This document shows positions 20,812 through 59,901 of a stretch of DNA of 64,000 nucleotides, piece by piece (position 1 is the first letter of the stretch; each line of letters opens with the position of its first letter). A program made the position numbers and the translations under genes. Source of the stretch: Octopus sinensis (Eukaryota); NCBI RefSeq assembly GCF_006345805.1, contig NC_043010.1, forward strand, positions 50,840,001-50,904,000, given 5' to 3'. Under the pieces are notes generated by a model that made no database searches, had not been told where the DNA came from, and worked only from the letters and a program-made list of their open reading frames with translations.

Positions 20812-21423
20812 ATGCTCAAGGCGATACATGCTGGAGAAAGTCGTTTCCATTGCGAAATGTGTGGGAAAACATTCGTTAACAACAGTGTTTTAAAAAGACA
20901 CAAAATAAGACACAACAAAGAAAAATCTTATCACTGTGATATTTGTGGGAAATCTTTTGTCACTAATTCGAATTTAGGTAGTCACAAAAAGATACATATT
21001 ACAGAAAAACCGTTTCCTTGCGAAATCTGTGGCAAATCGTTCGTTCGTAATACGCATTTAAAAAGTCACATACGGACACATACGGGAGAAAAACCTTTTC
21101 ACTGCGAGACCTGTGGGAAATCGTTCACTCAGCAGCTTAGTTTGAAATCCCACATACGAACGCACACGGGAGAAAAACCGTATAATTGTGATATATGTGA
21201 GAAATCTTTCACCGTGAAATCTGCTCTTGTAGTTCACAAGCGATCACATACTGGGGAAAAGCCTTTTCGCTGTAAGATATGTGGGAAGTCTTTCAGCAAC
21301 AACAGATTAAAAACACACGAAAAAGTACACACTGGGGAAAAACTATATCACTGTGAAATCTGTGGGAAATCTTTCAGTGAAAATGGTAGTTTAAAATCCC
21401 ACAAAAGAGTACACACTGGATAG
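20812..21423 (+). CDS. C2H2 zinc-finger protein, 7 fingers (ZNF locus 2)
   Basis: 203-aa ORF, seven C2H2 motifs (one a residue short); ends HTG-TAG. Confidence 0.88.
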   Translation: MLKAIHAGESRFHCEMCGKTFVNNSVLKRHKIRHNKEKSYHCDICGKSFVTNSNLGSHKKIHITEKPFPCEICGKSFVRNTHLKSHIRTHTGEKPFHCETCGKSFTQQLSLKSHIRTHTGEKPYNCDICEKSFTVKSALVVHKRSHTGEKPFRCKICGKSFSNNRLKTHEKVHTGEKLYHCEICGKSFSENGSLKSHKRVHTG

Positions 21424-21442
21424 AATGTCTATCACTGTAAAA

Positions 21443-21806
21443 TCTCTATATATAAACGGCAAAATGTCTGCGTGTGTGTCCTTTATACAAATCCACAATT
21501 TTTCAGTTAGAGGGCTCGCACTTTCTATGGTCATTCAAAACCGTCCAAGGGTGGTCGTGCACATCTTTACATTTCCCCAGTCACCCCACAAAGCCATTAA
21601 AAAAAATCAATAGAAGTGACTTTTTTGTGAATTTCCTATCCAAAACCCTATCAAAATGCCCAAAACTTGATACGCCAATTGAATGCCAGCTAGCTGTATG
21701 TGATTGGTCGGAGGTTTGGACAGTACTCGCGTGTATGTGCACACGCACACAGCTGTATATGCATGCACTAGCATTATGACCCAGCGTTGCCGGGTCATAG
21801 TGCTAG
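21443..21806 (+). mobile_element. Non-autonomous Helitron inserted in a terminal decayed finger
   Basis: A|TCTCTATATATAAA start, CCCAGCGTTGCCGGG hairpin, CTAG|T end, no TSD. Confidence 0.82.
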
Positions 21807-28322: not shown

Positions 28323-29276
28323 ATGCACCCTGGGGAAAAACCGTGCCATTGTGAAATTTGTGGGAAATCTTTCAGTGACAAGAGTACTTTAATAACACAT
28401 AAACGAATACACATGGGAAAAAAACCATTTCGTTGTGATATATGCTTGAAATTTTACTCCAGGAATTCCTCTCTTGTGTTCCATAAACGCAGTCATAGTG
28501 AAGATAAACCATACACTTGTGATGTATGTGGAAAGTCTTTCATTATGAATTCCAGTTTTCTAAATCACAAAAAAATACACGGAGAAAAGTTATTTCGTTG
28601 TGAAATATGCGGGGAATCTTTTGTCCGGAGTAGTTATGTAGAAATCCATATGAAAACTCACACGGGAGATAAGCCGTATCATTGTGAAGCATGTGGGATG
28701 TCATTCCGTGATAGCAGTACTTTAAAAACGCATATAAAAAGACATACTGGGGAAAAACCTTATTGCTGTGAGACGTGCGGAAAATCGTTTGTCAAGAATT
28801 GCGTCTTGAATGAACACAGGAAAAGACACAAGAAAGAAAGATCGTATCACTGTGACCTATGTGAGAAGTCTTTTGTCACAGTTTCGGATTTGAATTTGCA
28901 CAGACGGACACATACGGGAGAAAAACCGTTTCCTTGTAAAATTTGCGGGAAGGCTTTCGTCTGTAGCAGCCATTTAAAAAGGCACACGAGGACCCATACC
29001 GGGGAATACTTGTTTCACTGCGGAACGTGTGGAAAAGCTTTCAGTGAAAATTCCAGTTTAAAAATTCACGAACGAATTCATACAGGTGAAAAACCATTTA
29101 AGTGTCAGGTGTGCGGAAAAGCCTTCAGTCATAGCACTTCTTTAAAACGACACGAACGACTACACGCTGGAGATAGACTGTATCAATGTGAGATATGTGG
29201 AACAGCTTTCAATAAAAACAGCACATTGAAAAGACATGAAAAATTGCATACTACAGGAGAAAAGGCATATAATTGA
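28323..29276 (+). CDS. C2H2 zinc-finger protein, 11 fingers (ZNF locus 3)
   Basis: 317-aa ORF with eleven C2H2 motifs; TGA stop sits where the next finger's first Cys (TGT) is expected. Confidence 0.9.
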   Translation: MHPGEKPCHCEICGKSFSDKSTLITHKRIHMGKKPFRCDICLKFYSRNSSLVFHKRSHSEDKPYTCDVCGKSFIMNSSFLNHKKIHGEKLFRCEICGESFVRSSYVEIHMKTHTGDKPYHCEACGMSFRDSSTLKTHIKRHTGEKPYCCETCGKSFVKNCVLNEHRKRHKKERSYHCDLCEKSFVTVSDLNLHRRTHTGEKPFPCKICGKAFVCSSHLKRHTRTHTGEYLFHCGTCGKAFSENSSLKIHERIHTGEKPFKCQVCGKAFSHSTSLKRHERLHAGDRLYQCEICGTAFNKNSTLKRHEKLHTTGEKAYN

Positions 29277-30140: not shown

Positions 30141-32709
30141 CTTTCCGAGAGGACAGACGTGTGTGAAGCTGCTCCGTAAGTTTTCTGCAAATTTTGTTGG
30201 AAATCCTGTGAAAAGTTTTTATATTTTTCGATATTTGTGTGACCAAGCCAACTAACTTCTAGCGGAGCTAGTTGGCTCGGCAAAATTTTACCCCATTGGG
30301 GGTAAAATTACGTTTTGAAATTTATTTTGCATACATTTTCATTTACAATTTTAAATATGGCTTCGAAGAGAACTAGCTGTTCTCTTCTTCAAGTTTCACC
30401 CCACTACACGAAAAAATTTCGTTAACGGCTCCGAACTGCCCATTTCGTGCCTTAAAAGGCAAAGAAAATATTTCGAAGGAACATGCAAGCGCGTGCAACG
30501 TTCCAAATGAAAATGAAAACAAAGGCGTCATTTGTGACATCTTCAAAGATTTCTCTCCTCTCCCCTCTGCAAGCGTCCCAGTAGGGGAAAAAGACGGAAA
30601 AAAGAACATTACAAAGGAAAACAACAAAGATGGCGTCACCTTTGACGTCAATCAGAATTTTCTTTCTCTTCATTCCATGAGTGCAACAGTAGGGGAAAAA
30701 GAAGAAAAGAAAATAACAAACATCATCACCGACAACACAACAAGCCACCATAGCAATTTTGCTTCTATCACGAAACAAAACACAGAACAAATTGAAATTA
30801 CATTTGATGAAATAAAATCTGCAAAGGGGTTGTTGAGAAAAGAGGGGAACAGTGTCTTCCTCAATACACCTCAACAACTCATAAACGAAACAAAAAAAAA
30901 GACTGTGATTTATAAAGTTTTCGATAAGGAAAACAAAAAAATAACCAATGCAACACCCCAACAATTGGAAATGGCTCTTAAACCCATATGGGCCAAAAAG
31001 AGCTATGTCACAAGAGGGAAGCGTTACGGGACGGAGGTTCGCTTCGCAACGGAATACGAAGCCAGGGCGCATGCCATTTCGCCCTTGCAAAATGAAAGTT
31101 TCTTTCTGGTCCCATCATACCTTGGGCGGAAAGTACAAAAAATAAAAATTGACATAATACCCCCCGAACTCAGTATATCATGGCTGTCCTCTATGACATA
31201 GAGGACACTGCCACTATTCTAGATGTTCGAAGGGTAAGAGAAAAGAACTGGTCAGGTATGGGTATTCAACTGCTGGTGCAAATCCAGCAGGAAAACATTA
31301 ATGCCATACCTGACTCAGTCATTTTACCAGATGGAACCAGGCTGCACGTTACTGTAGAGGGGCGAAAGCCAAAATGTTACCTCTGCAGTAGCGAAAACCA
31401 CCTGAAGAAGAACTGCCCCATTCACAAAAAAAGAATGGAGGCAGCAGCAACAACAACAGCACAACACACCAAAGGCTACCACACCACCAACACCATCACC
31501 ACCACCAAGACGAACGACACCACCTCCAACAACAACCACCAAACCAACACCAACCCCAGCACCAAGAAAAACGACAACAAAAAAACAAGGAGAAACACCA
31601 ACAGTGTCATCATCACCAATAGACACAGCAACAACACCGCTACCAGCAGAACCAACAAAAATCTTTTGCCCTGCTGATGAAGGGCAGTCATCCAGCACTC
31701 ATCCCCTTTCCGGATCAGGACAGCTCGGATTGTGCGAGCACTGATACCGAGAAAGGAGAATGGCACACAGTGCCTCTAAAAAAGAAAAGGAGGAAAAAAC
31801 AAAAGGACACACGGGAAGCACGAACAAATAGTGCTTCCCAACAACAACACTTTCAACACCACTACTACCACTGCCACACACACCAACACCAACAGACACG
31901 ATTACAGCAATAAACACAAAAAATGAAAAACTCGTTGCATACCTAAAAGACAAAACAAGTACAAACATAACAGATTTCGTTATACCAACACACCACCAGC
32001 ACACATTCTCACAATAAAAATCAATGCAACAACATACAGTGACATAAAACAAATATTCCCTAACGATGTTGGATCGCTAGGGAAAAGTTTCTCAAAGAAA
32101 CTTTATAAAAATATCGTGGAAGCACCCGTGCAAAAGCACAAGGGAGCCACCCCCACCACCAACAACAGTAAGTAGAGCCTTTTTCTCCTTTTACTTTTTC
32201 CCACCTTTGAAACATGGCAAAACTTAGAATCGGTTGCTTGAATGTGAGAGCCCTAAAGGGCTAAAGTCAGACACTTTCCTCTTTGGTCAAGTCCTCATCA
32301 ACTTTTTCAAGTTTCACTTGAAAAGGAAGATGAGGTTAGAGAGGAGAGTGCTGTCCGATAGCAAGTTTTCTGAAAGGTGGGTGCATTGTGCGAGAATGGC
32401 CAGTATAAATGGACCAAGTCTCAGGTTTCGCCTGTGATTGAAAAAGGTTTTATAAAAGGAGAAAGGGGCTCTCTACCCCCCTTTTGACCAGGCTCCCGTT
32501 GGCTTTTATGGGGTTTTTTCCACCAGGAACCTTTCGAAGCGCCTCCCCCTATTGGGAGTTTTTTTTTCATTGTTATAATCTTTCGTTGTTAAACAGTTTT
32601 TACTCGGATTTTTTCAAAAACGGGCAAAACCCTTTGTAACCTTTCGTCCTGTTTTGTCCCTTTATGTTTACTAATCATGTGTGTCAGCCCTTGTGGCCAA
32701 TAAAAAGAA
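30141..32709 (+). mobile_element. Internally deleted Tx1/L1-like LINE: ORF1 with CCHC knuckle, only the extreme end of ORF2, 3' UTR
   Basis: ORF1 pieces 30677-31201 and 31180-31677 (GRKPKCYLCSSENHLKKNCP = CX2CX4HX4C); ~32230-32437 resembles a Tx1/L1 ORF2 C-terminus; no EN or RT motifs seen; (TTA)n on both flanks. Clade call is from recalled motifs. Confidence 0.7.
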
Positions 32710-32737: not shown

Positions 32738-33135
32738 GGTGGCGAGCTGGCAGAATTGTTAGTGCGTCGGGCGAAATGCTTAACGGTATTTCATCTGCCG
32801 CTACGTTCTGAGTTCAAATTCCTCCCAGGTCGACTTTGCCTTTCATCCTTTCGGGGTTGATTAAATAAGTACCAGTTATGCACTGGGGTCGATATAATCG
32901 ACTTAATCCGTTTGTCTGTCCTTGTTTGTCCTCTCTGTGTTTAGCCCCTTGTGGGTAATAAAGAAATAGGTATTTCGTCTGTCTTTACTTTCTGAGTTCA
33001 AATTCCACTGAGGTCAACTTTGCTTTTTGTCCTTTCAGGGTTGATAAATTAAGTACCAGTGAAGCACTGGGGTTGATGTAATCGACTAGTCCCCTCCCCC
33101 CAAATTTCAGGCTTTGTATCTTTAATAGAAAGGAT
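32738..33135 (+). mobile_element. Composite SINE A + A' dimer
   Basis: Same internal junction as 14740-15140. Confidence 0.85.
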
Positions 33136-34611: not shown

Positions 34612-37600
34612 CATGAAAGGCAGGTGTTAAACACTGATGTTGATATATGTGTGCATATCTTTGTCTACCACAACTGGTGTCAATGTGTCCCCATAATTTA
34701 GTTGTGCAGCAAAAGAGACTGACAATAAGTACCAGGTTTAAAAAACAAAATATGAGTTCTGGGCTCGATTCATCCCACTAAAATTCTTTGAGGTTGTGCC
34801 TCAACATGGACACAGTCTAATAACTGGAACAAGTAAAAGATGAATATGATGTATGAGAAAATATCTCTCCTTATATGAATTATATAAACTGATATTTAGT
34901 GTCTTAAAGCAGCCGAGATGGGGGTTCCTCTGAAGGATCTCTGGAGTAACACTACTCAACAGAATGTGCAGCTTGGATATCAGGGAATGTCTCTAAGTTG
35001 TGCCACATAATGAAGCCACAGCTGTGATACTACTGTAGTTAGAGTGCTGTAGGAAAGGACTGCAAGACAGAGTTTTCAAGCCAAACCAAATAGCAGGAGA
35101 ACTAGGATTTGGCCAAGAACAGAATGGTTGGAGAATATCCATAATTTCAGTTGGTCACATTTGGGAATCCACTAATTATGGGGGGGGGAAAGGGGTGGGG
35201 TACAAGAAATAGTATGAAATGAGATTTCAGGTGTCATACATTTCAATAGAATGCAAATAAAGCAATTTGAGACAACAGGTATGGCTATGTGGTTAAGAAG
35301 TTCACTTTCCAACTATGTGGTTTCAGGATCAGTCCTACTTTGAGAAAGTGTCTTCAGCTATAGCTCAGGGCTGACCACAGTCTTGTGAGTGAATTTGGCT
35401 GACAGAAACTAAAGAAAACTATTATGTGCCTGTGTTCATGTCTCTTTATCTTGACATCATATGATAACTGTGAGTGTCCCTGTCATGCAAGCAGTTTCAT
35501 TTATTTCCAGTATTCTGCTGGCCAATGATGAAATATTGCCTTGGAAGAAGGTTAGTGTTGGTGACAGGAAGGGCATCAGATCATAGAAAATCTGCCTCGG
35601 TAAACTTCTGTTCCATGCAAACATTGAAAACATGTTTTAAACAATGATGACACACACTGCGCAATGGCACTTCATCAAATTCATCAACACATCATAATTT
35701 CAACAGGAGTGGGTGTGTGGTAAGTAGCTTGCTTACCAACCACATGGTCCTGGGTTCAGTCCCACTGCGTGGTCCCTTGGGCAAGTGTCTTCTACTATAG
35801 CCTCGGGCCTACCAAAGCCTTGTAAGTGGATTTGGTAGACGGAAACTGGAAGAAGCCCGTCGTATATGTATGTATGTGTCTGTGTGTGCCTATGTTTGTG
35901 TGTCTGTTTGTCCCAACATTGCTTGACAACCGATACTGGTGTGTTTATGTCCCTGTAACTTGGCGGTTCAGCAAAAGAGACCGCTAGAATAAGCACTACA
36001 AAGAATAAGCACTGGGGTTGATTTGCTCGACTATAAAGGCGGTGCTCCAGCATGGCCTCAGTCAAATGACTGAAACAAATAAAAGAGTAATTGTTTTTAT
36101 ATCCTAGTTTAGTTTGAAGAAATTTACCAAGTGACAGATTGCTAGTAATCTCAATCCAGTGTTACATCATTTGCAGGGCTCAACATAAGATTTGTATTTG
36201 TGTTATATTCTAGTATGAACAAAATTGTATTCCTATCACTTATCAATCAAAGCCTTTCATGTCTTCATTTCCTACAGGTAAATGATACACATTCAACGGG
36301 CCACACTATATGCAGTGAAATTTCTACATCTGCATTCAATGTCCTTGTCATCAGTTCTTATGTTTGGTCAAGTTCATGTCATATAATTCTTCCACTGAAA
36401 GAAAAATTCCTTGTTACAAAGAAACAGCAGTTTTTTAGCATTCAGATTATTTTGTCAAATGTAATGATTATTTATTCACATTGATTTGAATTAATCATGC
36501 ATTATCTTGTAGCTCCAAGATTTTGAAGTTGTGATTGTTTATTTTTAGAATGACATTGTAGGATAGGTGCAAGAAGTGAGATCTGGCAACTCTGATTATA
36601 AAACGGGTAGAATATTTGGGCCTAATATGGCTGGTTTAAATGCTTAAGAGTTAATCTCTTATCTCTTCCTTATTTATTATATATTTCACATTAAACACAT
36701 CTGATTTTAAGATCAATTAAATGACAGAAATCTGTTACATTTACTTTTCTCAGCTGTTCATTTCATGACAGGCAATTCTGGTAAATGCACTCATATTTCT
36801 AGAATATCTGAAGTTTCACCAGAAATCTTACTATATTTATTGTGTAACTGGCGTTGGTATTAATAAACCATTCTTTATTCTGTCATCACTTGGAATGGAA
36901 ACTTCCTTGTCAGAACACATCATCACAGCGTACATTGATAGTGTTCTCCCTGGCACATTCTGCACCACAACCTTTGATTATATCCACCATACTCTTTCTC
37001 CTTTGCAAGATAGGAGCAGTTTGGAATTATGCAAAGGTGTGGAATCATGCTTCTAATGTGATAACATTTGCTATGAATGAATAACTCTACATTCTATTTA
37101 CTAACAGTGAAAACACTTCTCATGAGGTTCTGTGCTTTGCAGTATGGTGGTCGCTAAGAAAAAATAAAGAATGTCTGCTTACCACAAGAGCTGAAGCTAT
37201 GTTCAAGATAATGAAAATATCAGGTTGGCAACAAATACAGCAAATAATTTAATGCATGAATAGTTAAAAAAGTTGAGTGGCTGTGTGGTAAGTAGCTTGC
37301 TTACCAACCACATGGTTCTGGGTTTACACTATATTTGTGACTGTCATAAATTGGGTTTTTTTTTTCTTTATGTCCTTTTACTAATCCCATTGCAGCATGA
37401 AATGAGAGTATTTTAACATGCTTACTGACAATCATTTCTGCTGTCCATGATGGCTGGTGATAATGAGATTGACTTCAAGAGAGAAACCAGAGGGAGTATT
37501 ACATTACAAACTGAGAAGCAAGGAAGTGTTCCCACCAGTGAACTGCACAGATGTGTTTTCCAACACTCCTCTCTGATTTTATTGATAATGTTGAATACAC

Positions 37601-38767
37601 TAAACCTTCTATTGCAACCTGTGTAAGTTAACATTTAGCAACAAACAGTTATTCACTTATGGCCACACCCAGAGGAAAGATCCCAACATTGACTGAATGA
37701 CAGCCATGACATGGGCCCCTAAGAGAAAGAGGAAGTGTGGAAGATTCTAGAACAGTAGAAGAACTGTTGAAAATGAGGCAGGCTGGTGGATGGGGGAACA
37801 TGGAACTAGATACTGATCACAGCTATTGACAGGATAACATGGCGAGAGAGAGAGAGTGGAAGCCTTATTGCATATAGCACCAACTGGAAAGAAGAACTAT
37901 TCATTTAAAGTTAACCTATCTCTACCAGTGTACCATATTTCCATAAAATATTTGCATTATCAAATTACTGCTGCATTGTCGAAAAAAAAGTTATGATTTG
38001 CATCTAAAGTTTCTGAAGGGTGGGTTAGTGACCTCTGAGACTGATGAGTTTGATATCATTACTGTTCTATTTAACTGTTACAAGTCAACCTACAAGAAGG
38101 CCATGAACAGTGAGGTGAGTTGGTGGGCAGGAAGTAAGCAGTTTTAAGCATATGGCTGACTGAAAAACTGGCATCATTTGAGATATTGAAGACAAAGCAG
38201 TAATTTAGAAAACAGATGGAAAAATCTCTTAGCTGTTACCACAAATGAAGCTGTGATGGTGAAAGGTTAATCATGAGTTCAGTGCTGTATAGAAAAGGAA
38301 ATTTTGATGAACTTGCTACTCAATGTAACCAGTAAAAAAATGCTACTTGCTTCATAACAGTTCAATGAGAAACATAGTTGTTTGTTTGGAAGAGGATGGC
38401 CACATCTTGTAGAAAATGAAGGCAAGTTTGGATATATAACACTAAATTCAGTTATATTTTCCATGAACCAACAGAAGAAAATCTCAGCCGGTCTAAATGG
38501 CACAATATTTCAATAGTAGCTAAACAGCACATAATTTGTGAGTACATGTTTGAAATAGAACAGTAACTCAGGTAAAGAGTATAACAGGTTTTAATTTACA
38601 AGTTTACATAAATTATTACAAAAATGTACATATACATCTTTCTCTTTAACAAAGTTAATTAATTTGTACTGTTCAAAATGTCGTAAGGGAATGAAAGAAA
38701 GACATGAGTAAATTTTGTTCAGGTCAACCAAAAAGTTTTGTATTAAAACTACCCAAACAAAAGAAGT

Positions 38768-40357
38768 TCAATGTTGTACAAAGTGAATGTTCTTGTGTTC
38801 ACATTTCATCTGAGTGCCACATACGTCACAATGATATGATTTTCCTCCAGCGTGTATTTTTTCATGTGCATTTAACCGGTTATTACTGAACGATTTGCCA
38901 CATATGTGACAGTTATGTGATTTTTCTCCTGTGTGTACCCGTTTGTGAGATTCAAGAGAGCATTTCACAGTGAGAAAATTTCCACAGTGATATGGCTTTT
39001 CCCCAGTATGTGTTCGTATGTGCGACTGCAACCTGCTATTTTCAGTGAAAGTGTTTCCACATATTTTGCGACTGCAACCTGCTATTTTCCACATATTTTG
39101 CAACTGCAACCTGCTATTTTCAGTGAAAGTGTTTCCACATATTTTGCGACTGCAACCTGCTATTTTCCACATATTTTGCAACTGCAACCTGCTATTTTCA
39201 GTGAAAGTGTTTCCACATATTTTGCGACTGCAACCTGCTATTTTCCACATATTTTGTGACTGCAACCTGCTATTTTCAGTGAAAGTGTTTCCACATATTT
39301 TGCGACTACAACCTGCTATTTTCCACATATTTTGCAACTGCAACCTGCTATTTTCAGTGAAAGTGTTTCCACATATTTTGCGACTGCAACCTGCTATTTT
39401 CCACATATTTTGTGACTGCAACCTGCTATTTTCAGTGAAAATGTTTCCACATATTTTGCGACTGCAACCTGCTATTTTCCACATATTTTGTGACTGCAAC
39501 CTGCTATTTTCAGTGAAAGTGTTTCCACATATTTTGCGACTGCAACCTGCTATTTTCAGTGAAAGTGTTTCCACATATTTTCTACCCAGTGTGTACTCTT
39601 TTGTGTGTTTTTAAACTACCACTTTTACTAAAATATTTGCCACATACGTCACAATGATATGATTTTCCTCCAGCGTGTATTTTTTCATGTGCTTTTAACC
39701 GGTTATTACTGAACGATTTGCCACATATGTGACAGTTATGTGATTTTTCTCCTGTGTGTACCCGTTTGTGAGATTCAAGAGAGCATTTCACAGTGAGAAA
39801 ATTTCCACAGTGATATGGCTTTTCCCCAGTATGTGTTCGTATGTGCGACTGCAACCTGCTATTTTCAGTGAAAGTGTTTCCACATATTTTGCGACTGCAA
39901 CCTGCTATTTTCCACATATTTTGCAACTGCAACCTGCTATTTTCAGTGAAAGTGTTTCCACATATTTTGCGACTGCAACCTGCTATTTTCCACATATTTT
40001 GTGACTGCAACCTGCTATTTTCAGTGAAAGTGTTTCCACATATTTTGCGACTACAACCTGCTATTTTCCACATATTTTGCAACTGCAACCTGCTATTTTC
40101 AGTGAAAGTGTTTCCACATATTTTGCGACTGCAACCTGCTATTTTCCACATATTTTGTGACTGCAACCTGCTATTTTCAGTGAAAGTGTTTCCACATATT
40201 TTGCGACTGCAACCTGCTATTTTCCACATATTTTGTGACTGCAACCTGCTATTTTCAGTGAAGTGTTTCCACATATTTTGCGACTGCAACCTGCTATTTT
40301 CCACATATTTTGCGACTGCAACCTGCTATTTTCAGTGAAAGTGTTTCCACATATTTT
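38768..40357 (-). pseudogene. Two tandem partial copies of the 3' fingers of ZNF locus 4, each preceded by a 78-bp minisatellite
   Basis: Period ~823 bp (CCCCAGTATG at 39001 and 39824); the copies carry a 9-nt deletion removing a Cys of parental finger 7. Confidence 0.85.
39018..39581 (-). repeat. 78-bp higher-order minisatellite (46+32 bp subunits) derived from half a zinc finger
   Basis: Translates as KICGNTFTENSRLQSQNMWKIAGCSR, six full in-frame copies; second array at 39841-40357. Confidence 0.92.
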
Positions 40358-41137
40358 CTACCCAGTGTGTACTCTTTTGTGTGTTTTTAAACTACCACTT
40401 TTACTAAAATATTTGCCACATACGTCACAATGATATGATTTTCCTCCAGTATGTACTTTTTCATGTGCTTTTAACCGGTTATTACTGAACGATTTGCCAC
40501 ATATATGACAGCGATATGGTTTTTCTCCTGTATGTACCCGTTTGTGAGATTCAAGAGAGCATTTTACAGTGAAAGAATTTCCACATATATCACAGTGATA
40601 TGGTTTTTCTCCCGTATGTGTTCGTATATGCGACTGCAACCTGCTATTTTCAGTGAAAGCGCTTCCACATATTTCACAACTAAATGGTTTTTCCCCAGTA
40701 TGCGTTCGTATATGTCTTTTCACATTACTATTTCGCAGAAAAGATTTTCCACATATTTCACAGTAAAATGGTCTTTCCCCACTGTGAATTTTTTCATGCC
40801 TACTCAAGTCCCCGTTAGTAATAAAAGATTTCCCACAAATATCACACCGATAGGGTTTCTCTGCGGTGTGTGTTCTAATGTGAATTTTCAAAAGACTTTT
40901 ACGAGCAAAAGATTTTCCACATATTTCACAGGGAAATGGCTTTTCTCCAGTATGCACTCTTTTATGGCCGCATAAATCCGAATTAGTGATAAAGGATTTC
41001 CCACAAATATCACAGCGATAGGATTTTTCTTTGGTGTGTCTTCTTTGGTGTTCTTTTAAATTACTATTACGGACGAACGATTTACCACATGATTCACAGT
41101 GAAAGCGCCTTTCTCCAGCATGGATTCCCTTGTGCAT
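40358..41137 (-). CDS. C2H2 zinc-finger protein, 9 fingers (ZNF locus 4)
   Basis: 259-aa ORF; C-terminal fingers closely match locus 2; ends HTG-TAG. Confidence 0.88.
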   Translation of the reverse strand: MHKGIHAGERRFHCESCGKSFVRNSNLKEHQRRHTKEKSYRCDICGKSFITNSDLCGHKRVHTGEKPFPCEICGKSFARKSLLKIHIRTHTAEKPYRCDICGKSFITNGDLSRHEKIHSGERPFYCEICGKSFLRNSNVKRHIRTHTGEKPFSCEICGSAFTENSRLQSHIRTHTGEKPYHCDICGNSFTVKCSLESHKRVHTGEKPYRCHICGKSFSNNRLKAHEKVHTGGKSYHCDVCGKYFSKSGSLKTHKRVHTG

Positions 41138-41485: not shown

Positions 41486-41700
41486 GTTGGCAGAAACGTT
41501 AGCACGCCGGGCGAAATGCTTAGCAGTATTTCGTCTGCCGTTACGTTCTGAGTTCAAATTCCGCCGAGGTCGACTTTGCCTTTCATCCTTTCAGGGTCGA
41601 TTAAATAAGTACCAGTTACGCACTGGAGTCGATATAATCGACTTAATCCGTTTGTCTGTCCTCTCTGTGTTTAGCCCCTTGTGGGTAGTAAAGAAATAGG
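41486..41700 (+). mobile_element. SINE family A
   Basis: Near full-length copy. Confidence 0.9.
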
Positions 41701-42396
41701 TTATATTTACGAATATATAATGAAAATTGGCCTCTAAACCTAACAATAATACAGAAAGCAGATGTGATTTGCAGTTTTTAAAATGTGTTTAGTTAATTAT
41801 TCAAATAAAATCGACTTTGCTTTTCATGCTTCCAGAGTCAATAAAATGGGATATGATCGAGTGTTACCTGTTACCTTAATTTGACAGTTTAAACATATAA
41901 AAGAAATCAATAATTATTTAGTAAATTTCAAATCGAGTTGAATGGGAGTTATATTTCTTCATGGCTGTTATGTTACGTAAACAGAATATGGAAATGATAA
42001 TAAAAACCTGTGAAGACTTTTTAAAATGAGTTTAAGAGTCCGACCAAACATGCGATTGATGGATATGCCAAAATTATTGAACTGTCACAGCTGATGTTGA
42101 CAAGGGAGGTCACTGTGTTAAGTAAATTAAGAAACGAATTGTGGGAGTAGTATATCCTCTCACTTCCGCCGAAAGTGTGTGATTCTTGTTATTGCCTATC
42201 TAGGAGATCTGTTAAGAAAAATATTCCTGTCATTACTATTTCCCATTTGTTTTTAAAATGAAGGTGCGATCGCTAAAACAAATCAAAGACCTGTAGTGCT
42301 GTAGTTTTAATTCATAAAGTTCATCCATTGCCTCCCGTTGAGTACAATCGACTATGGCCGGTGTAGATAACCATGAAACTATAGTGTTATATGAAG

Positions 42397-46161: not shown

Positions 46162-46614
46162 GTAAGTGTGTAATGTCGATTTGGAAGCTGTGTCGTCGTC
46201 AGTGATTCGTCTGCAAACTTCTCGTGGAATATTTACATTACAAAAGGTGAGATTATGTAAAAAGTTACCCCTGAAAAAAATATATATATTTTCTTTATAT
46301 TTATTTTTGAAGTTAGTGAATGCAATTTTAAAATAATGATTTTTAACAAAAGAACTCGAAACAAGCAGAAAATATAAACCTTTTAATTTTCGCCGGATTT
46401 TTTATTCCAAGTAAAAATATAATGAAAATTGGATGTGTGCTTAAACATGGGTAACAAGCTAAACTAGTATATGGTTTTCGCAAAGAAAATGCATATATTC
46501 TTAAGTAAAGACAAAAATACAGTGTCCTTAGAATGGTGCAGAAATATGTGAATTAGTGATTAGGGTGTGTTTGCGGCCCACTTATTCTTATCAAACTCCC
46601 CTATACGATCCAAC

Positions 46615-46945
<331 letters not shown>

Positions 46946-46949
46946 CACA

Positions 46950-47083
46950 CTTGCTTGAAGATTCTGTGCACCCACAGATGAAACTCAGAACAGCATGAGA
47001 CTAACTCGACCCAAAATAAAAATATATTATTAATCTCCACTGTGGTAATGTATACTCTTTTTGCCGATAGCTAACACTAAACG

Positions 47084-47143
<60 letters not shown>

Positions 47144-47836
47144 ATATATATATAATAAACTTAGTATCATGTAGATATGGTTTGTTGTTAGAAGGCTGCG
47201 ATAGTTTACAACCGTCTGCAAGATTGTGGCTGAAATGTCAGAATTCGCATATTTTGTTAAGGTCAGTTGACAACCGGAATAGACTGGATTATAGATTGAT
47301 AGAAGTGAAAATAAATTGATGTAAAGATAAGCAGACATCAATAATTAGAACAGTGATTCTCATGGAGTGGGAGATATGATGGAGAGGATTGAAAAGGGCG
47401 CAGCCAAATCACCATGTTTAATAATTTAATAGTTTAACCTCGTCCAACACCATGACGAAGAAAGAATTATTATATTGACGTAAATTCTAATTTGTCGTCA
47501 CCTTAACCCATTAATTAATAGGGGAAGATGGTAAAAAATTTCACTAACGTTTAGGGGTGGAGCCTGACAGTTGTTGGTCTGACAACCACTGCATTAGAGA
47601 ATGCTTTTGCTGTTGATATCCGGTTTTCCGTGAAGATTCACCTAGAAAGACATCTCGGCAATCAGCTTGCAAATTAGCCTTTGAAAGTCACTGGTCATCG
47701 ATATTGAACTCTTATCAATCAGTCGTGTCTTAACCCTAATATTGTTTACTTTTGCTCTCGATATTATGCAGAACTGTCGCAGAAAATAATAAATCATGTA
47801 CAACCAAAACACACACACACACGTATGTGTATGTGT

Positions 47837-47873
<37 letters not shown>

Positions 47874-48400
47874 CGGAGGTAAAGAATACTGAACAAAAAC
47901 CCTAACCACCGGGTGTGTGTATTCTTTACTGTCACCAATATATATATATATATATATATATACTTGCTTGAAGATTCTGTGCACCCACAGATGAAACTCA
48001 GAACAGCAAGAGATTAACTCGATCCAAAATAAAAATATATTATTAATCTCCACTGTGGTATTGAATACTCTTTTTACCGATAGCTAACACTAAATGTATA
48101 TACATACATGCATACATACATACATATATATATATATAATATATAATATATATTATATATATATATTATATATATATATAATATATATATATAAACTTAG
48201 TATTATATATAGTATAATGAAATTATTGTATACAGTGTTCAGGTTTGTTGTTAGAAGCCTGTGATAGTTTACAACCGTCTGCAGATTGTGGCTGAAATGT
48301 CAGAATTCGCATATTTTGTTAAGGTCACTTGACAACCAGAATAGACTGGATTATAGATTGACAGAAGTGAAAATAAATTGATGTAAAGATAAGCAGACAT
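46950..48400 (+). repeat. Local tandem duplication of a ~400-bp unique segment, period ~1013 bp
   Basis: 46950-47338 matches 47963-48400. Confidence 0.9.
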
Positions 48401-48421
48401 ATATGTATCAATTCTATATAT

Positions 48422-48465
<44 letters not shown>

Positions 48466-48575
48466 GTATATGTATATATATGTATATGTATATATATATA
48501 TATGTATATGTATATGTATATTGCCGCTGGTGGCAATAAATTATACAAAAATTTTCCTTGCCACCCTATATTGAT

Positions 48576-48610
<35 letters not shown>

Positions 48611-48641
48611 GTATGTATATATATATGTATGTATATATATG

Positions 48642-48674
<33 letters not shown>

Positions 48675-48697
48675 GATATATATATATTATAATATAG

Positions 48698-48730
<33 letters not shown>

Positions 48731-49023
48731 TGTATATATATTATATATATATGTATATATATATGTATGTATATATATAATATGTATATATATATGTATG
48801 TATTATATATATATTATATATATATATATATTATATATGTTTATGTATATATATATATATGTATATATATATGTGTATGTAATATATATATTGTATATAT
48901 ATATATGTATATATATATATATGTATATATAGTTATAATTATATATATATTATTATATATATATATGTATATATATATATATTATATATATATATATGTA
49001 TATGGATATATATATATATATTA

Positions 49024-49081
<58 letters not shown>

Positions 49082-50211
49082 GATATATATATGGACCAAA
49101 ATGTATGCACGCCACTATATATATATACAAAATGGGACAAGAACGCAAAACATCCGTATGCTCTTGGTTTGGTTTTTCCTTGGGGCTGGCCAGATTGGAG
49201 CAGTCTCAAGGGTGATCGGTCGAAGTTGCAAGGATAGTCTGGGGCTTGACTGAGGAGGTAAAGCTTCGAATGGTCCGTCCTGTTTTCTTTGTGTCACCTA
49301 TCTTGTGTAAAGGCCAACAGGAAGCGTTGATGCTTCCTAGAGCTAAATAGCGGTGGTGTAATTCCCTCTATGGGACTGTCCTGTTAAGTTGACAGTATAT
49401 AACTGCTCTATCGTTCCACCACCGCTCATATCTCTCTGAAATATTTAGAAATTTAATATTTCTAATATATATATATTATAAGTATATAATGGGTGGATTT
49501 GGTAGACGGAAACTGAAAGAAGCCTGTCATATATATGTATATATATATATATATGTTTGTGTGTCTGTGTTTGTCCCCCTAGCATTGCTTAACAACTGAT
49601 GCTGGTGTGTTTACGTCCCCATAACTTAGCGGTTCGGCAAAAGAGATGGATAAAGTAAGTACTGGGCTTACAAAGAATAAGTCTCGGGGTGCTCCAATAT
49701 GGCCGCAGTCAAATGACTGAAACAAGTAAAAGAGTAAAGAGTATATATATATTATAAGTATATATAATATATGTTTTTATATATATAATATATCATCATC
49801 ATCATCATCATCATCGTTTAGCGTCCGTTTTCCATGCTAGCATGGGTTGGACGGGTCAACTGGGGTCTGTGAAGCTGGAAGGCTTCGTCAGGCCCAGTCA
49901 GATCTGGCAGTGTTTCTACGGCTGGATGCCTTTCCTAACGCCAACCACTCCGCGAGTGTAGTGGGTGTTTTTTACGTGCCAATATATATATAATATATGT
50001 TTATATATATATGAATCGGTTTCTGACTGAAGAATGAAGGCTTTGAATGACCTGTCTGTTTTTCATGTTCGTCCCTTCGTGTATTTCACGTTATTTATAT
50101 TTATATATGTAAAGTTTTATTCTATATATATATATGCATATGTATATATAATATATATATATGCATATATATATATATGCATATATATATATATGCATAT
50201 ATATATATATA

Positions 50212-50265
<54 letters not shown>

Positions 50266-52293
50266 TATATATATATATATATATATATGCACATATATAT
50301 ATATATATGCATATATATATATATATATGCATATAGATATATATATATGCATATATATGCATATATATATATATATGCATATAGATATATATATATGCAT
50401 ATATATATATATGCATATATATATATATAATATGCATATAGATATATATATATATGCATATAGATATATATATATATGCATATATATATAGTGTATATAT
50501 ATATATATATAATATATATATATTATATGTTAGTGAAGACAAATAAATGCTACTTTATCACACTCAAACCACATTGCCTGTGACTTTGCCTTGTTCTATG
50601 ATACAAACTTTCTGTTTTAAAATCATAATGAAAACCTTCCATCAAAATTTCATGTTATTTTCCAAATACAAACTTAATAATATCGGGTATTTTTTTTAAA
50701 TTCTTCATTATTTTCAGCTTTAATTGGAATAAAGACAGTGTATTTCAGCAAAAATATGGTAAGAAAAGGATTAAGACGAGACACCGTAGATCTTAATTGC
50801 ACACACATATCTACAAAACTTGATACACACTGAGCACAAGGGAACTTCCACACAGTTACTTGACCTGCTAGAAATAGTAACCAAATCACACAATCATAGA
50901 AAGTGGAGGATATATTAAATAATCCTTTGCCGCTCATCTCCTTGCATAAAGTTATCCCATCTCCAGTTCAGTCTTACAAACTTCTCCATGGCCTCACTAG
51001 TGCTTGTGCCACGAAAAAAGAAAAAAATGCTCCCAGAGTATTTTGCAAAGTGAGTGACACTAGGAAGAGTATTCAGCTGCAGAAACCATGCCAAAGCAGA
51101 CACTGAAGCATGATACAGTTTTTGGTGCTCATGGCATCTTGTGAAGCTGTCTAACCATTGCCAGCATGGAACATGGATGTCAAATGATGATGGTTATAGT
51201 GATGCCTCTAAAAACATGATCTAATCATAGCTGGAATATTTTTAGACATGGGGCTAATTAACTTGCCTGGCCTCTGTGCCGGTAGCACGTAAAAAGCACC
51301 ATCCAATCGTGGCTGTTTGCCAGCCTCGTCTGGCACCTGTGCCGGTGGCACGAAAAAAGCACCCACTACACTCATGGAGTGGCTGGCGTTAGGAAGGGCA
51401 TCCAGCCGTAGAAACATTGCCAGATCAGACTGGGCCTGGTGTAGCCTTCTGGCTTCCCAGACCCCAGTTGAACCATCCAACCCATGCAAGCATGGAAAGC
51501 GGATGCTAAACGATGATGATGATGATGATGAATTAGATACACATATCCTATGGATTAGTCTTGGTTCTTAAAAGATGAAACAGGTTCCTGCTAGGGGGTA
51601 GCGGAGGCCAAAAACAACAGCATGTAGCTAATGGGTTCTATCGATTTAACAAGAAAAGGAATTTAAGATAATCTTATTTTTATATGATTTTCTTGATTTC
51701 TTAGTTTAGTGAGTGCAGACAGGAATTAAAGTGGGTGCTTGGAGCTAAGCTCAATTCTCTAGATGTTGTCAACAAAAATTGACAGTTATTTGAAACTGGG
51801 GATCCCAACTGGGCTGATATCACAGTTTGAATTAACTAACACAAGTGTCATAAAATTGGCTTCTAACCTGAGCCAAAAAGTAAAACTTAATGGTAAGATT
51901 TTAAAGCATAAACACAAATAGCATCCATCCATCTACTCTACCCACTGTTCGAGGGAGGGTTGTGGAGATAGATTCCTCAGGCACCTCCTCCATCAGGTCT
52001 TGTTAGAAGCAACCACTGTTAGACCTAACATGAAATATATGACCTCATGCCAAGCTTAATTATTAGTTTAAGAACTAAGTGCCTATGATGTTTGTGTTAT
52101 GGCACATCGTAACACAGAGAATTACTCCAAAGCTTATATGCAGAGGCACAGGTGTGACTGTGTGGTAAGAAGTTTACTTCCCAATCACATGGTTTTGGGT
52201 TCAATCCTACTGTGTTGCACCTTGGGTTATTATCTTGTACTATAGTTCCAGGCTGACCAAAGCCATCTAAGTGGAATTGGTAGATGGAAACTG

Positions 52294-52393
<100 letters not shown>

Positions 52394-55300: not shown

Positions 55301-55722
55301 TGGCTTATTCCTACCTTTGAACTTACTGGCCTTATTCCAAAATTTGAAACCATTACAGATGGATAAAAGATGGCAAGCTGTCAAAATCATTAGTTAATCA
55401 GACATGATGTTTAGCGACATTTTTATCCAATCTTTGATTCTGAGTTCAAAATCCGTTGAAGTTAACTTTGCTTTTTATCCTTTTGGGGTCAATAAAATAA
55501 GTACCATTTGAGCTCTGGGGTTGCTATAATCAACTCGCCCCCTTACCCAAATTTAAGGTTTTGTGCCTATTGTAGAAACAATCATTATACATAGATAAAC
55601 TCCCTTACTTTGTGTGTGTGTGTGTGTTGGTGGGTAGCAGTTACACTGTGTATTTGAGTTTATTTATAAAATGTGTTTCTCTCTTTGTTTCCTTTTCTTA
55701 TAGAGGCTACATAAGCTTTACC

Positions 55723-56211
55723 ATGGACCAGTCTGTGTGTCTGGATGATGACGACGATGATATCATCTCCGATATCGTAAATACTGCTCATCTCAACATT
55801 GACCAGGATCCTTTGAGCTCTACATTAGTCCACTCACCTACCACCGATACACTGGACTCTGTGATGCTGGAGCCTTCTCCTTCCGAAGATGGCAGTGAGG
55901 AGCAGGATGGAGAGGAGCTGGCAAAAAGCAATTCAGTAAGTCCAATCCCTGACGATTCTTCATTGCAAGATCTTGAAAGTGATGCCATAGAAGCAGCAAC
56001 AGAAACTGTAGCAGCAGCAGCAGCAGCAACAACAGCAGCAGCAGATGATGATGATGAAGTAGAGGTGACACCTGCTGTTGATGATGAAGAAGTGATCCCC
56101 CCAGTGGAGCAACAAGACCAACAGGATATAATGATAACGATAACTTCACCCACCACATTGGATACAGCAGCAGCATCAAGTGAAAATGAAGAGAAGTCAC
56201 CAGGAGCAGAG
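55723..56211 (+). CDS. TRAPPC12: TRAPPC12 coding exon 1 (acidic low-complexity N-terminus)
   Basis: Acceptor TTCTTATAG at 55703, ATG 55723 (MDQSVCLDDDD..), phase-0 donor GAG|GTAGCT; joins in frame to the conserved exons. Confidence 0.8.
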
Positions 56212-57268
56212 GTAGCTAGCATTTATTTCAGTCTTTTTTTGTTTTTTAATCAGGTGCAGGCATGGCCGTGTGGTAAAAATTTGCTTCCCAAACCACATGG
56301 TTCCGAGTTCAGTACCACTGTGTCATACCTTGGACAAGTGTTTTCTACTTTAGCCTGGGCAAATTAAAGTTTTGTGAGTGGATTTGGTTGATGGAAACTG
56401 AAAGAAGCTTATTTTTTTTTTAGAGCCACTGCAACTGAAATGAAGAAGGAAGAATTGTACTTTAGGCTGAAATTCTTGCAACAGAGTGTACTTTACCAGA
56501 GGCATGTCAGTAACAGGTGGTGGTAATTAAATTGGGCAATGAAATAAGTCTGTTCACCAAAAACAAAAAAAAGAAATGATCTCCCTGACAGATTTCTGTT
56601 TAGTTTCTGTTTACCAAATTTCACTTACAAGGTTTTGGTCAACCTAAAGCTTTTGTAGAAGACACTTACTCAAGGTGTCACACAGTGGTATTGAACCCCA
56701 AACCACACTGAAACTTAGATTGGAAAATACAGTATGAACATTGTGAATGAGAAAGGCAGGCACAAAGGTTAATCTTTCTTGTAAATGCAAAGAGATAGAA
56801 GTGATTGTTGTAATTATAGAAAAGGCCAAAGAATAGTTATAATTTGATGGATTGAGTAGATGAACTAAAGGTTTAATGAAAGGAATTTGTGAAGTAAAAA
56901 GATGGATTGTAAATGTAATTAAGTTAAGAGTAAATGACCTTATGGCTGTAATGGTGCCTTGTGCCTTCTGTCTAATGTAATGCTTATTTGTCCACATTAT
57001 TTTGAATTACTCCTGCATTATGTTTTTGTGTTGAAATTTTGATGATATGCTTGTATATTTTTATATGACATCGTAGGATTGGTGTGAGAGTCTGAAGATA
57101 GTGAGTCTGTACATAAATCAGATACAATATTTAGGCCAGATATAGCTAGTTTAAATACTAAAAGTTTAATCTAGTGTGCCAATTGAAAACAGAAAACGTT
57201 TAAAAGTCTCTGACTGTCTTCTCTTGTGTTTTCTCTCATTTTTATCCATCCTTCTCTCTTCCCTTCAG

Positions 57269-57592
57269 AGTCCTACAGAGTTTCATATTCCAGACAATGA
57301 AGACAATGCAGATCTTCCTGAGCAAGCAGCCAGTGAAGGGACAGCCGAAATGGATGAGAGCTGCTTGAACCAGCCATCAATCAGCAGCTACTTTGCGACA
57401 CCACCAGTGACCAGCAACGACTCGGCTGAGAACTTTTTTGATAACCTAACAATTGATACAAAGCCACCACCGACTTCACCAATACCACCAGCCCTGGATT
57501 CACTCACACTGGAACAGGCAGAGAACTGCAATGAGGTAGTTCATTCACAGAGCACAGACATTTTACCGACATCCCCTAGAAATTTTGCACAG
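57269..57592 (+). CDS. TRAPPC12: TRAPPC12 coding exon 2
   Basis: CCCTTCAG|AGT (SPTEFHIP..RNFAQ), phase-0 donor CAG|GTTGGT. Confidence 0.8.
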
Positions 57593-59828: not shown

Positions 59829-59901
59829 TATATATGCAGTGCTCACATACATACATACATGCACACATTGCACACAAAATAACATTACTAGGTATAGCAT
59901 G

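What the first reader, a model, noticed from the sequence alone, without database searches (positions are those of the whole stretch)
38768..40357. Half a zinc finger turned into a coding minisatellite, then duplicated with its neighbours
Seen: after the locus 4 TAG come two ~0.8-kb units. Each is a 78-bp repeat array (46+32-bp subunits, both pieces of parental finger 6, EICGSAFTENSRLQSH) that runs in frame into copies of fingers 7-9. The 26-aa unit keeps two Cys but no His pair. A CTACAA variant occurs in both arrays, so the array predates the duplication, while NAH versus KAH shows later divergence. Inference: slippage at AAAATA microhomologies caught reshaping a finger array, possibly producing a new Cys-rich repeat protein.
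Basis: partly seen in the sequence, partly recalled or inferred. Interest (0 to 1): 0.7.

Follow-up and report, generated by a model that had tools for sequence, protein, structure and literature searches.

The report
Non-coding minisatellite born from zinc-finger fragment
Just after the stop codon of a nine-finger zinc-finger gene lies a decaying partial copy of the gene's own tail, in which a 46-base piece of finger 6 has grown into a 78-base tandem repeat and the whole block was then duplicated; the structure is real and its history can be read, but nothing indicates that it makes a protein.

Summary
On the minus strand a nine-finger C2H2 ORF (41137-40361) ends at TAG 40360-40358. Two tandem units follow, of 776 and 767 bp.

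Each unit holds:
- an array of alternating 46-bp (L) and 32-bp (S) subunits. L is a piece of finger 6; S is L minus 14 bp.
- the finger 6 tail and copies of fingers 7-9.

Both arrays share one variant order, so the array predates the unit duplication.

The "coding / new protein" reading is not supported:
- The TAG is also present in a 21%-diverged paralog, so the array arose downstream of an existing stop.
- Three of six frames of the 78-mer are open, two of them antisense. 76% of shuffled units have at least one open frame.
- Array 2 carries a frameshift.
- Both finger 7 copies lost the CxxC knuckle.
- The copy lineage has 8 nonsynonymous and 4 synonymous changes. The parent has 0 and 3.
- No protein in two libraries of 5.8 billion and 1.84 billion sequences carries the 26-aa unit.
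- AlphaFold gives equally confident beta-solenoids for the sense and antisense ORFs.

Finger 9 plus TAG is identical between parent and unit 2, and the distal finger 9 is truncated. This fits unequal homologous exchange between finger 9 copies.

Verdict: an ordinary, neutrally decaying tandem-repeat by-product. Assembly and transcription could not be tested.

The parts
40358..41137 (-). Parental C2H2 zinc-finger ORF (259 aa, nine fingers) with its TAG stop at 40358-40360. It starts at an ATG conserved with the paralog at 20812.
   Evidence: Pfam finds 9 zf-C2H2 stretches, E 2e-54. Since the duplication the parent lineage shows only synonymous changes (3 syn, 0 nonsyn).
40629..40674 (-). Source segment inside parental finger 6 ((E)ICGSAFTENSRLQS(H)) that corresponds to the 46-bp L subunit.
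   Evidence: Exact location. L differs from it by two G>A changes.
39844..40356 (-). Array 2 (nearest the gene): 7 L (46 bp) + 6 S (32 bp), 513 bp. One L carries a 1-bp deletion (within 40256-40270) that shifts the frame.
   Evidence: TRF period 78, 6.6 copies, score 979. Subunit parsing. Frameshift seen.
39582..39843 (-). Unit 2 tail: finger 6 tail, F7' (9-bp deletion, no CxxC), F8', full F9' and a second TAG (39582-39584).
   Evidence: Alignment and codon analysis. It shows 16 differences from the parent in codons 5-65 and none in the last 93 nt.
39021..39580 (-). Array 1 (distal): 8 L + 6 S, 560 bp. The variant order is the same as in array 2, apart from one missing S and one extra L+S.
   Evidence: TRF period 78, 6.9 copies, score 1018. 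Subunit parsing.
38815..39020 (-). Unit 1 tail: finger 6 tail, F7'' (same 9-bp deletion), F8'' (NAH instead of KAH) and F9'' truncated after CDVCG at 38815.
   Evidence: One substitution relative to unit 2 (38870 T versus 39693 A).
38768..38814 (-). Unique flank read through by ORF 38768-39574 (TQMKCEHKNIHFVQH, then TGA). It has no similarity to finger 9 or to anything else in the window.
38590..38595 (-). First poly(A)-signal-like hexamer (ATTAAA) downstream of the parental stop. No AATAAA or ATTAAA lies between 40358 and this point, so a parental transcript would carry both arrays in its 3' UTR. This is inference.
20812..21423 (+). Paralog used as outgroup. Its last three fingers correspond to F7-F9 and it ends with the same HTG-TAG, followed by a decayed finger start (NVYHCKIS).
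   Evidence: 61 of 288 nt differ from the parent.

Best explanation
This is a non-coding, neutrally decaying partial duplicate of the 3' end of a C2H2 zinc-finger gene. It sits immediately after the gene's stop codon and contains a young minisatellite.

Inferred order of events:
1. A copy of the segment from mid finger 6 to early finger 9 was placed right after the pre-existing TAG (junction GGGTAGA|AAATATGTGG). Its distal end was joined to unrelated flank at 38815. A template switch, or a duplication followed by a deletion, would do this.
2. In the copy, the 46-bp finger 6 fragment was duplicated head to tail. One copy lost 14 bp between GAAA repeats, giving the 32-bp subunit. The 46+32 = 78-bp pair then expanded to 6-7 copies by replication slippage or unequal sister-chromatid exchange. 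C>T/G>A variants accumulated, two of them at the unit's only CpG.
3. An unequal homologous exchange between the parental finger 9 and the truncated finger 9 copy duplicated the whole block (periods of 776 and 823 bp). This created a middle unit with a full finger 9 and a second TAG.
4. The two arrays then gained or lost whole subunits, and a few point changes arose.

The long ORFs are a side effect of a stop-free unit whose length is a multiple of three. If the gene is transcribed, the arrays most likely lie in its 3' UTR or just beyond it, with no function of their own.

Shown: the anatomy, the order of steps 2-4, the pseudogene-like substitution pattern, and the absence of protein relatives. 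Inferred: the molecular mechanisms, the 3' UTR location and the lack of function.
For: - Anatomy and subunit parsing.
- The stop predates the array: the paralog 20812-21423 (21% diverged) ends HTG-TAG at the same position.
- Relaxed constraint on the copy: with the paralog as outgroup, the copy lineage has 4 synonymous and 8 nonsynonymous changes. These hit the TGEKP linker (P>S), HTG>HAG and the structural Phe. A 9-bp deletion also removes the Cys knuckle of finger 7. The parent lineage has 3 synonymous and 0 nonsynonymous changes.
- Frameshift in array 2.
- Open frames are not informative. 3 of 6 frames of the consensus 78-mer are open, two of them antisense. 76% of 20,000 shuffles have at least one open frame, and 7% have three or more.
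- No protein with this unit: 0 hits in the word-indexed search of 5.8 billion proteins. In the exhaustive HMMER scan of 1.84 billion representatives the hits inspected were generic poly-ZNFs, unrelated repeat proteins and tandem-repeat junk ORFs.
- Pfam finds no significant stretch inside the arrays.
- AlphaFold gives a beta-solenoid for the sense ORF (block-mean pLDDT about 58-90 over the array, mostly 82-90; pTM 0.66). It gives the same kind of model for the antisense ORF (block means 71-84; pTM 0.65). Foldseek finds no match with E <= 0.001.
- No RNA structure signal (z = -0.5) and no Rfam hit.
- Unequal exchange: all 16 parent-versus-unit differences lie in the 195 nt upstream of finger 9 and none in the last 93 nt (Poisson P = 5e-4). 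The last unit-type marker is codon 65. The distal finger 9 is truncated exactly as this model requires.
Against: - No expression data could be consulted, so transcription or translation of the arrays is not excluded.
- ORF 38768-39574 is intact over 268 codons and has in-frame ATGs, one per repeat plus one at 38809.
- The sample of substitutions is small. Fisher P = 0.08 for the copy-versus-parent syn/nonsyn contrast.
- Under the unequal-exchange model the 36 nt of truncated finger 9 in unit 1 should carry about 3 differences from the parent, but it carries none (P = 0.05). Gene conversion or a different history is therefore possible.
- The first event (junction after the TAG plus the truncated distal end) cannot be reconstructed uniquely.
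- The organism was not identified and no second assembly or read set was available, so the tandem duplication itself is unverified.
Confidence: 0.75

Rival explanations
1. Assembly artefact. The second 0.8-kb unit, or the repeat counts, may be an assembler loop through the shared finger 9 / TAG / array-start sequence, or two alleles of one variable minisatellite placed in tandem.
For: - The units are nearly identical outside the arrays, with 1 difference in about 200 bp.
- Parental finger 9 + TAG + array start is identical to that of unit 2. This is the kind of repeat that produces graph loops.
- The frameshift is a 1-bp loss in a TTT run, which is a typical long-read error.
- The differences between the arrays (subunit indels) look like allelic VNTR differences.
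Against: - The window has no N runs.
- The two units differ by specific substitutions and by two subunit indels, so they are not a simple repeated traversal.
- The full versus truncated finger 9 arrangement is exactly what a real unequal exchange predicts.
- The array itself has internally ordered variants, which are hard to produce by mis-assembly.
Confidence: 0.12
2. The arrays are translated. One route is initiation at the in-frame NMWK ATGs; another is stop-codon readthrough of the parental TAG, which is in frame with the first 1.7 units of array 2. The product would be a new Cys-containing 26-residue repeat protein, possibly a beta-solenoid, fused to two or three degenerate fingers.
For: - ORF 38768-39574 is open for 268 codons and has in-frame ATGs, one per repeat plus one at 38809.
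- The last subunit plus the finger 6 tail fits C-X4-C-X12-H-X3-H (reading).
- AlphaFold models the array as a regular beta-solenoid, with block-mean pLDDT mostly 82-90.
- The unit shares the motif I.GNTFT.NS and a similar repeat spacing (my reading of the alignment) with a repeat protein in the database (P0124, E 2.8e-17).
Against: - The antisense ORF is equally open and is modelled with about the same confidence.
- The P0124 match is a short motif scored over many repeats, not homology.
- Unit 2 is frameshifted.
- Finger 7 copies are disabled and the copy lineage shows a roughly neutral 8:4 nonsyn:syn ratio.
- The ATG context CAAAATATGT lacks G at +4.
- No similar protein was found in either library, of 5.8 billion and 1.84 billion proteins.
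- The region lies downstream of an old stop codon.
Confidence: 0.04
3. The arrays are a functional non-coding element, for example a 3'-UTR repeat that modulates stability or localisation of the zinc-finger mRNA, or a source of small RNAs matching finger 6.
For: - No poly(A) hexamer occurs between the parental TAG and 38595, so a parental transcript would include both arrays.
- The L subunit is 96% identical to the coding finger 6.
Against: - No thermodynamic structure signal (z = -0.5) and no Rfam family.
- The repeats are direct, so they cannot pair with finger 6 in the same RNA.
- The variant pattern is CpG decay and unit turnover, as expected for neutral DNA.
- The in-window paralog has nothing comparable after its stop.
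Confidence: 0.07

Closest known systems
PRDM9-type zinc-finger coding minisatellite (e.g. PMC3890296, 'Diversity of Prdm9 Zinc Finger Array in Wild Mice ... this Coding Minisatellite')
   Same: It is a tandem array derived from C2H2 finger DNA. It evolves by unit gain and loss, and interspersed variant repeats record its history.
   Different: In PRDM9 the unit is a whole finger in register (84 bp, from my own knowledge; not checked here). That array lies inside the CDS, and every unit is a working finger. Here the unit is 78 bp, made of a 46-bp finger fragment plus its 32-bp deletion derivative, read in two frames. It lacks the His pair and lies downstream of the stop codon.
Mouse KZFP 'related genetic units', which include a group formerly annotated as Satellite repeats; the paper uses MMSAT4 elements to define clusters (PMC5363842)
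   Same: Zinc-finger-derived sequence that looks like satellite or tandem-repeat DNA inside a ZNF cluster. Those clusters also show duplications, deletions and pseudogenes.
   Different: Those units are whole genes or pseudogenes spread through clusters. They are not a sub-finger minisatellite at a single 3' flank.
[quoted passage not shown]
   Same: A unique sequence of tens of bp becomes a head-to-tail duplicate and then expands. Short direct repeats (GAAA, TGTG) flank the two internal deletions seen here.
   Different: The L-unit junction itself shows at most about 1 nt of homology in the parental sequence, so neither model is demonstrated for the founding duplication. The array also has a compound (46+32) unit.
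Unprocessed partial gene duplicates (pseudogene fragments) created by tandem duplication and expanded by non-allelic homologous recombination
   Same: It lacks the 5' part of the gene and carries disabling deletions. It shows a near-neutral nonsyn:syn ratio. The second duplication has its junction inside a tract identical between the repeats.
   Different: There is no difference in kind. The unusual feature is the minisatellite that arose inside the fragment.

Membership tests
Classical C2H2 zinc finger (Pfam PF00096) - for the 26-aa repeat unit | C-X2-4-C-X12-H-X3-5-H zinc ligand set | tested here: not met
   The internal units read C-SRKI-C-X12-Q..., with no His pair. Only the last subunit joined to the finger 6 tail fits the pattern (C-X4-C-X12-H-X3-H).
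Classical C2H2 zinc finger (Pfam PF00096) - for the 26-aa repeat unit | Significant match to the Pfam zf-C2H2 profiles | tested here: not met
   in the 268-aa ORF the reported best zf stretches lie at residues 167-241 (last subunit plus finger copies), and none inside the array. The array gives only summed sub-threshold hits to unrelated families, with 0 stretches passing.
Minisatellite / VNTR | Head-to-tail repeats with a unit of about 10-100 bp, an array of 0.5 kb or more, and interspersed variant repeats | tested here: met
   TRF finds period 78, 6.6-6.9 copies and 97% matches. Ordered variants TCG/TCA/TTG and TGTAG.
Minisatellite / VNTR | Copy-number variation among individuals | not testable with these tools
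   Only one assembly is available. The two paralogous arrays do differ by whole subunits, which shows turnover.
Coding minisatellite of a ZNF gene (PRDM9-like) | The array lies inside the CDS, upstream of the stop codon | tested here: not met
   The array starts 2 nt after the TAG at 40358-40360. The same TAG is in the paralog.
Coding minisatellite of a ZNF gene (PRDM9-like) | The reading frame is maintained across all units, with purifying or positive selection on the encoded residues | tested here: not met
   Frameshift in array 2. There are too few variants for dN/dS within the arrays. The attached finger copies evolve about neutrally.
Partial-gene duplicate / pseudogene fragment | Lacks the 5' part of the gene, has disabling lesions and shows relaxed constraint relative to the parent | tested here: met
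   It starts in mid finger 6. Its lesions are a 9-bp loss of the CxxC knuckle, a truncated finger 9 and a frameshift. The copy has 8 nonsyn: 4 syn changes against 0: 3 for the parent.
Tandem duplication by non-allelic homologous recombination | The junction falls within a tract identical between two direct repeats, and sequence beyond the junction is of donor type | tested here: met
   Unit-type markers stop at codon 65, and the following 93 nt plus the array start are identical to the parent (P = 5e-4 under uniform divergence).
Parallel beta-helix / beta-solenoid repeat proteins | Homology to a known solenoid repeat family, or a confident and specific structural match | tested here: not met
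   The best sequence hit, P0124, shares only I.GNTFT.NS scored over repeats. Foldseek finds no match with E <= 0.001. The antisense control ORF gives an equally confident solenoid.

The most novel reading that the evidence does not exclude
The distal ORF (38768-39574) may be transcribed and translated from one of its in-frame ATGs. The product would be a de novo 26-residue-repeat protein, possibly beta-solenoid-like, made half from a zinc-finger reading frame and half from the same DNA read out of frame, and fused to two degenerate fingers. That would be a very young protein-coding gene born from a frameshifting minisatellite.
Probability: 0.03. Interest if true: 0.65.

Novelty: new member of a known kind. 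Interest (0 to 1): 0.2.

Why it matters
The locus is a clean, datable example of how tandem-repeat-rich zinc-finger genes shed and amplify fragments of themselves:
- a sub-finger piece became a compound minisatellite;
- a homologous exchange between finger copies then doubled the block;
- both arrays kept turning over afterwards.

This is useful as a worked case for annotators. Long ORFs through a repeat whose period is a multiple of three, and confident AlphaFold solenoids for perfect repeats, are not evidence of a gene. The locus may also serve as a polymorphic marker. It does not change the understanding of zinc-finger proteins unless translation is shown.

Tried and rejected
- **Array peptide against 5.8 billion proteins:** no hit.
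- **Exact look-up of ten window ORFs in the 15-billion-protein collection:** none present.
- **Organism identification:** the parental ZNF search was swamped by generic poly-ZNF proteins of many animals at 33-54% identity. A neighbouring non-ZNF gene gave only three unnamed hits at 46% identity, and the contig of one of them carried no informative name. The organism stays unidentified. My impression that this is a mollusc or cephalopod ZNF cluster is memory only and was not tested.
- **S-subunit junction as an exact DNA pattern in metagenome and prokaryote genome collections:** no match, as expected for a eukaryotic locus.
- **Exhaustive HMMER scan of the array ORF:** 85 weak hits. The twelve whose matched segments I inspected, including the best ones, were poly-ZNFs or unrelated repeat proteins; the full sequences of three (P0168, and P0149 and P0185) read as tandem-repeat junk ORFs. 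I rejected the beta-helix resemblance as homology.
- **AlphaFold on the sense ORF:** it looked encouraging until the antisense control gave the same result. Foldseek was not significant.
- **RNA structure of three repeat units:** not different from shuffles. Rfam found nothing in the window.
- **Search for the missing end of the distal finger 9, or for paralog-like flank, downstream of 38815:** nothing was found. The founding rearrangement therefore cannot be resolved.
- **Global alignment of the two units:** it proposed a 46-bp gap plus 9 array mismatches. I prefer the variant-aware alignment (indels of 32, 78 and 1 bp, plus 1 mismatch), because it keeps the unique TGTAG subunits aligned.

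Full report
**Setting**

The window is AT-rich eukaryotic DNA, about 36% G+C. It holds four ORFs made of classical C2H2 fingers:
- 11243-12058 on the minus strand
- 20812-21423 on the plus strand
- 28323-29276 on the plus strand
- 40358-41137 on the minus strand

There are also many copies of a SINE-like element of about 215 bp, retroelement fragments and long TA microsatellites. I could not identify the organism. The finding concerns the minus strand downstream of the fourth ORF.

The parental ORF (41137->40361) encodes nine fingers. Finger 6 is CEICGSAFTENSRLQSHIRTH. The ORF ends ...HKRVHTG-TAG at 40360-40358.

Two nucleotides after the TAG, array 2 begins (40356->39844). It runs without a break into the finger 6 tail (SHIRTH), copies of fingers 7, 8 and 9, and a second TAG (39584-39582).

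Array 1 follows (39580->39021), then the finger 6 tail and copies of fingers 7 and 8. The copy of finger 9 stops being homologous after CDVCG at 38815. After that comes unique sequence.

TRF scores the arrays 979 and 1018, with period 78 and 97% matches.

Splitting at AAATATGTGGAA gives two subunit types:
- L (46 bp) corresponds to parental 40674-40629 with two G>A changes.
- S (32 bp) is L without GAAACACTTTCACT, a 14-bp deletion between two GAAA repeats.

Neither 46 nor 32 is a multiple of three, but 78 is. One frame therefore reads L in the finger frame (ICGNTFTENSRLQS) and S one base out of frame (QNMWKIAGCSRK).

**History**

Array 2 reads, from the gene outward: Lcg S L*ca S Lca S Ltg S' Lca S Ltg S Lcg. 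Array 1 reads: Lcg Lca S Lca S Ltg S' Lca S Ltg S Ltg S Lcg. The suffix gives the state of the unit's only CpG, S' is the TGTAG variant and L* carries the 1-bp deletion.

The shared order, with the single S' between Ltg and Lca, shows that one array was copied. Afterwards the copies diverged by one S, one L+S, a 1-bp deletion and a C/T change.

Outside the arrays the two units differ at one base in about 200. Both share the 9-bp deletion in finger 7 (between TGTG repeats) and 16 substitutions relative to the parent (8%).

All 16 of these lie upstream of finger 9. The 93 nt of finger 9 plus TAG, and the start of the next array, are identical between the parent and unit 2. The Poisson probability under uniform divergence is 5e-4.

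Taken with the truncated distal finger 9, the simplest account has two steps. An older state had the parent, then one array unit ending in a truncated finger 9. An unequal homologous exchange between the parental finger 9 and that truncated copy then generated the middle unit with a full finger 9 and its own TAG.

The founding event cannot be resolved further. It produced the junction GGGTAGA|AAATATGTGG and the distal breakpoint at 38815. No remnant of the missing finger 9 end lies downstream. The parental sequences share at most about 1 nt at the L-L junction, so 'AAAATA microhomology' is not shown for it.

**Is it coding? Every test I could run says there is no evidence for that.**

1. The paralog at 20812-21423 has its last three fingers matching fingers 7-9 and is 21% diverged. 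It ends at the same HTG-TAG, followed by a decayed finger start. The stop is therefore older than the partial duplicate (8% diverged), and the array has always been downstream of it.
2. The consensus 78-mer is open in three of six frames, two of them antisense. The plus strand carries ATG-initiated ORFs of 198 and 165 aa through the same arrays. Among 20,000 composition-matched shuffles, 76% have at least one open frame.
3. Array 2 is frameshifted.
4. With the paralog as outgroup, the copy lineage has 8 nonsynonymous and 4 synonymous changes. These include TGEKP>TGEKS, HTG>HAG and the structural Phe of finger 7, and the copy has also lost the finger 7 Cys knuckle. The parent lineage has 0 nonsynonymous and 3 synonymous changes. 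The contrast has Fisher P = 0.08. This is suggestive on small numbers.
5. The within-array substitution variants are all C>T or G>A, and two sit at the only CpG. This fits neutral decay.
6. No protein with this unit was found:
   - The word-indexed search of 5.8 billion proteins found none.
   - The exhaustive scan of 1.84 billion representatives gave 85 weak hits. The ones I inspected, including the best, were ordinary poly-ZNFs, tandem-repeat junk ORFs or unrelated repeat proteins.
   - The best hit, P0124, shares the motif I.GNTFT.NS and, by my reading of the alignment, a similar repeat spacing. That resemblance rests on a few residues scored over many repeats.
7. Pfam finds fingers only in the tail.
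8. AlphaFold models the sense ORF's array as a beta-solenoid, with block-mean pLDDT mostly 82-90 and pTM 0.66. The antisense ORF gives the same kind of model, with block means 71-84 and pTM 0.65. Foldseek finds nothing with E <= 0.001. The model therefore reflects perfect periodicity, not a real fold family.
9. The RNA shows no structure signal, and there is no Rfam match.

**Likely status**

No AATAAA or ATTAAA occurs between the parental TAG and 38595. If the gene is transcribed, both arrays probably ride in a 3' UTR of about 1.8 kb. This is inference.

I put about 0.75 on a functionless, neutrally evolving by-product. The rivals are:
- an assembly artefact affecting the unit duplication, about 0.12
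- some non-coding role, about 0.07
- translation, about 0.04

**Comparison with known things**

- PRDM9-type coding minisatellites share the finger origin and the turnover (PMC3890296; my own knowledge for the 84-bp whole-finger unit). They differ in every defining respect that I tested.
- Mouse KZFP-related units, once annotated as satellites, show that finger DNA can look like satellite DNA (PMC5363842).
- The minisatellite-birth models summarised in PMC3389668 describe the general process. Only the two internal deletions here show the expected flanking direct repeats.

The locus is best filed as a new instance of known kinds: a partial tandem gene duplicate, a minisatellite and a duplication by unequal homologous exchange.

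**Not tested**

- Read support for the assembly
- Copy-number polymorphism
- Transcription and translation
- The orthologous locus in other species

Noticed in passing
window 41488-41701 and at least 15 other sites (e.g. 14750-14973, 32748-32971, 19149-19371, 59610-59830, 60183-60403): A SINE-like element of about 215 bp occurs in many copies, both full-length and partial, at 74-90% identity (the full-length copies at 84-90%). One pair forms a 171-bp-period tandem at 18935-19317. A separate 50-bp conserved block at 37275-37324 has at least 12 further copies.
   Followed up: partly
window 21421-21460: After the TAG of the paralog 20812-21423 the frame still reads NVYHCKIS, a decayed linker and finger start. 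The shared TAG therefore probably arose from a GAA/GAG linker codon of a once longer finger array.
   Followed up: partly
window 39021-39574 (minus strand) versus P0124: Two G>A changes turned parental GSAFTENS into GNTFTENS. With the 26-aa period this mimics the I.GNTFT.NS repeat of an unrelated 3659-aa repeat protein (34% identity, E 2.8e-17). This is a chance convergence inflated by repeat-on-repeat scoring.
   Followed up: yes
window 9346-10238 (minus strand): Two adjacent ORFs look like a retroelement fragment. One has a PHD-finger hit (Pfam E 4e-6). The other resembles, from memory, the C-terminal region of LINE reverse-transcriptase ORFs. G+C rises locally to 47%.
   Followed up: partly
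window 30677-31677 (plus strand): Two consecutive ORFs, the second with a weak CCHC zinc-knuckle hit (E 1e-3). This may be a gag-like retroelement remnant, next to a CACCAA microsatellite at 31482-31565.
   Followed up: no
window 15722-16591: A purine-rich 24-bp / AGAA repeat of about 0.85 kb gives long Lys/Arg/Glu-rich pseudo-ORFs.
   Followed up: no
window 1997-2398 and 3425-3847: Two tandem arrays with a period of about 150 bp have consensus units that look reverse-complementary to each other (my reading of the TRF consensus; not tested). Together they would form a large inverted pair.
   Followed up: no
window 46556-50542 and 52300-52385: Several hundred bp to 0.7 kb of TA / TATA-type microsatellite, where G+C drops to 27-30%. 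These produce the Tyr/Ile-rich pseudo-ORFs in the ORF list.
   Followed up: no
window 55612-59394 (plus strand): Three large ORFs are probably exons of a non-ZNF gene. Their only relatives are three unnamed proteins at 46% identity, from Logan and ENA assemblies.
   Followed up: partly
window 41137 and 20812: Both paralogous ZNF ORFs start at a conserved ATG that sits inside what looks like the tail of an older finger (M[HL]K[GA]IHAGE[RS]RFHC). This suggests finger-only ORFs or an upstream exon that was not found.
   Followed up: no
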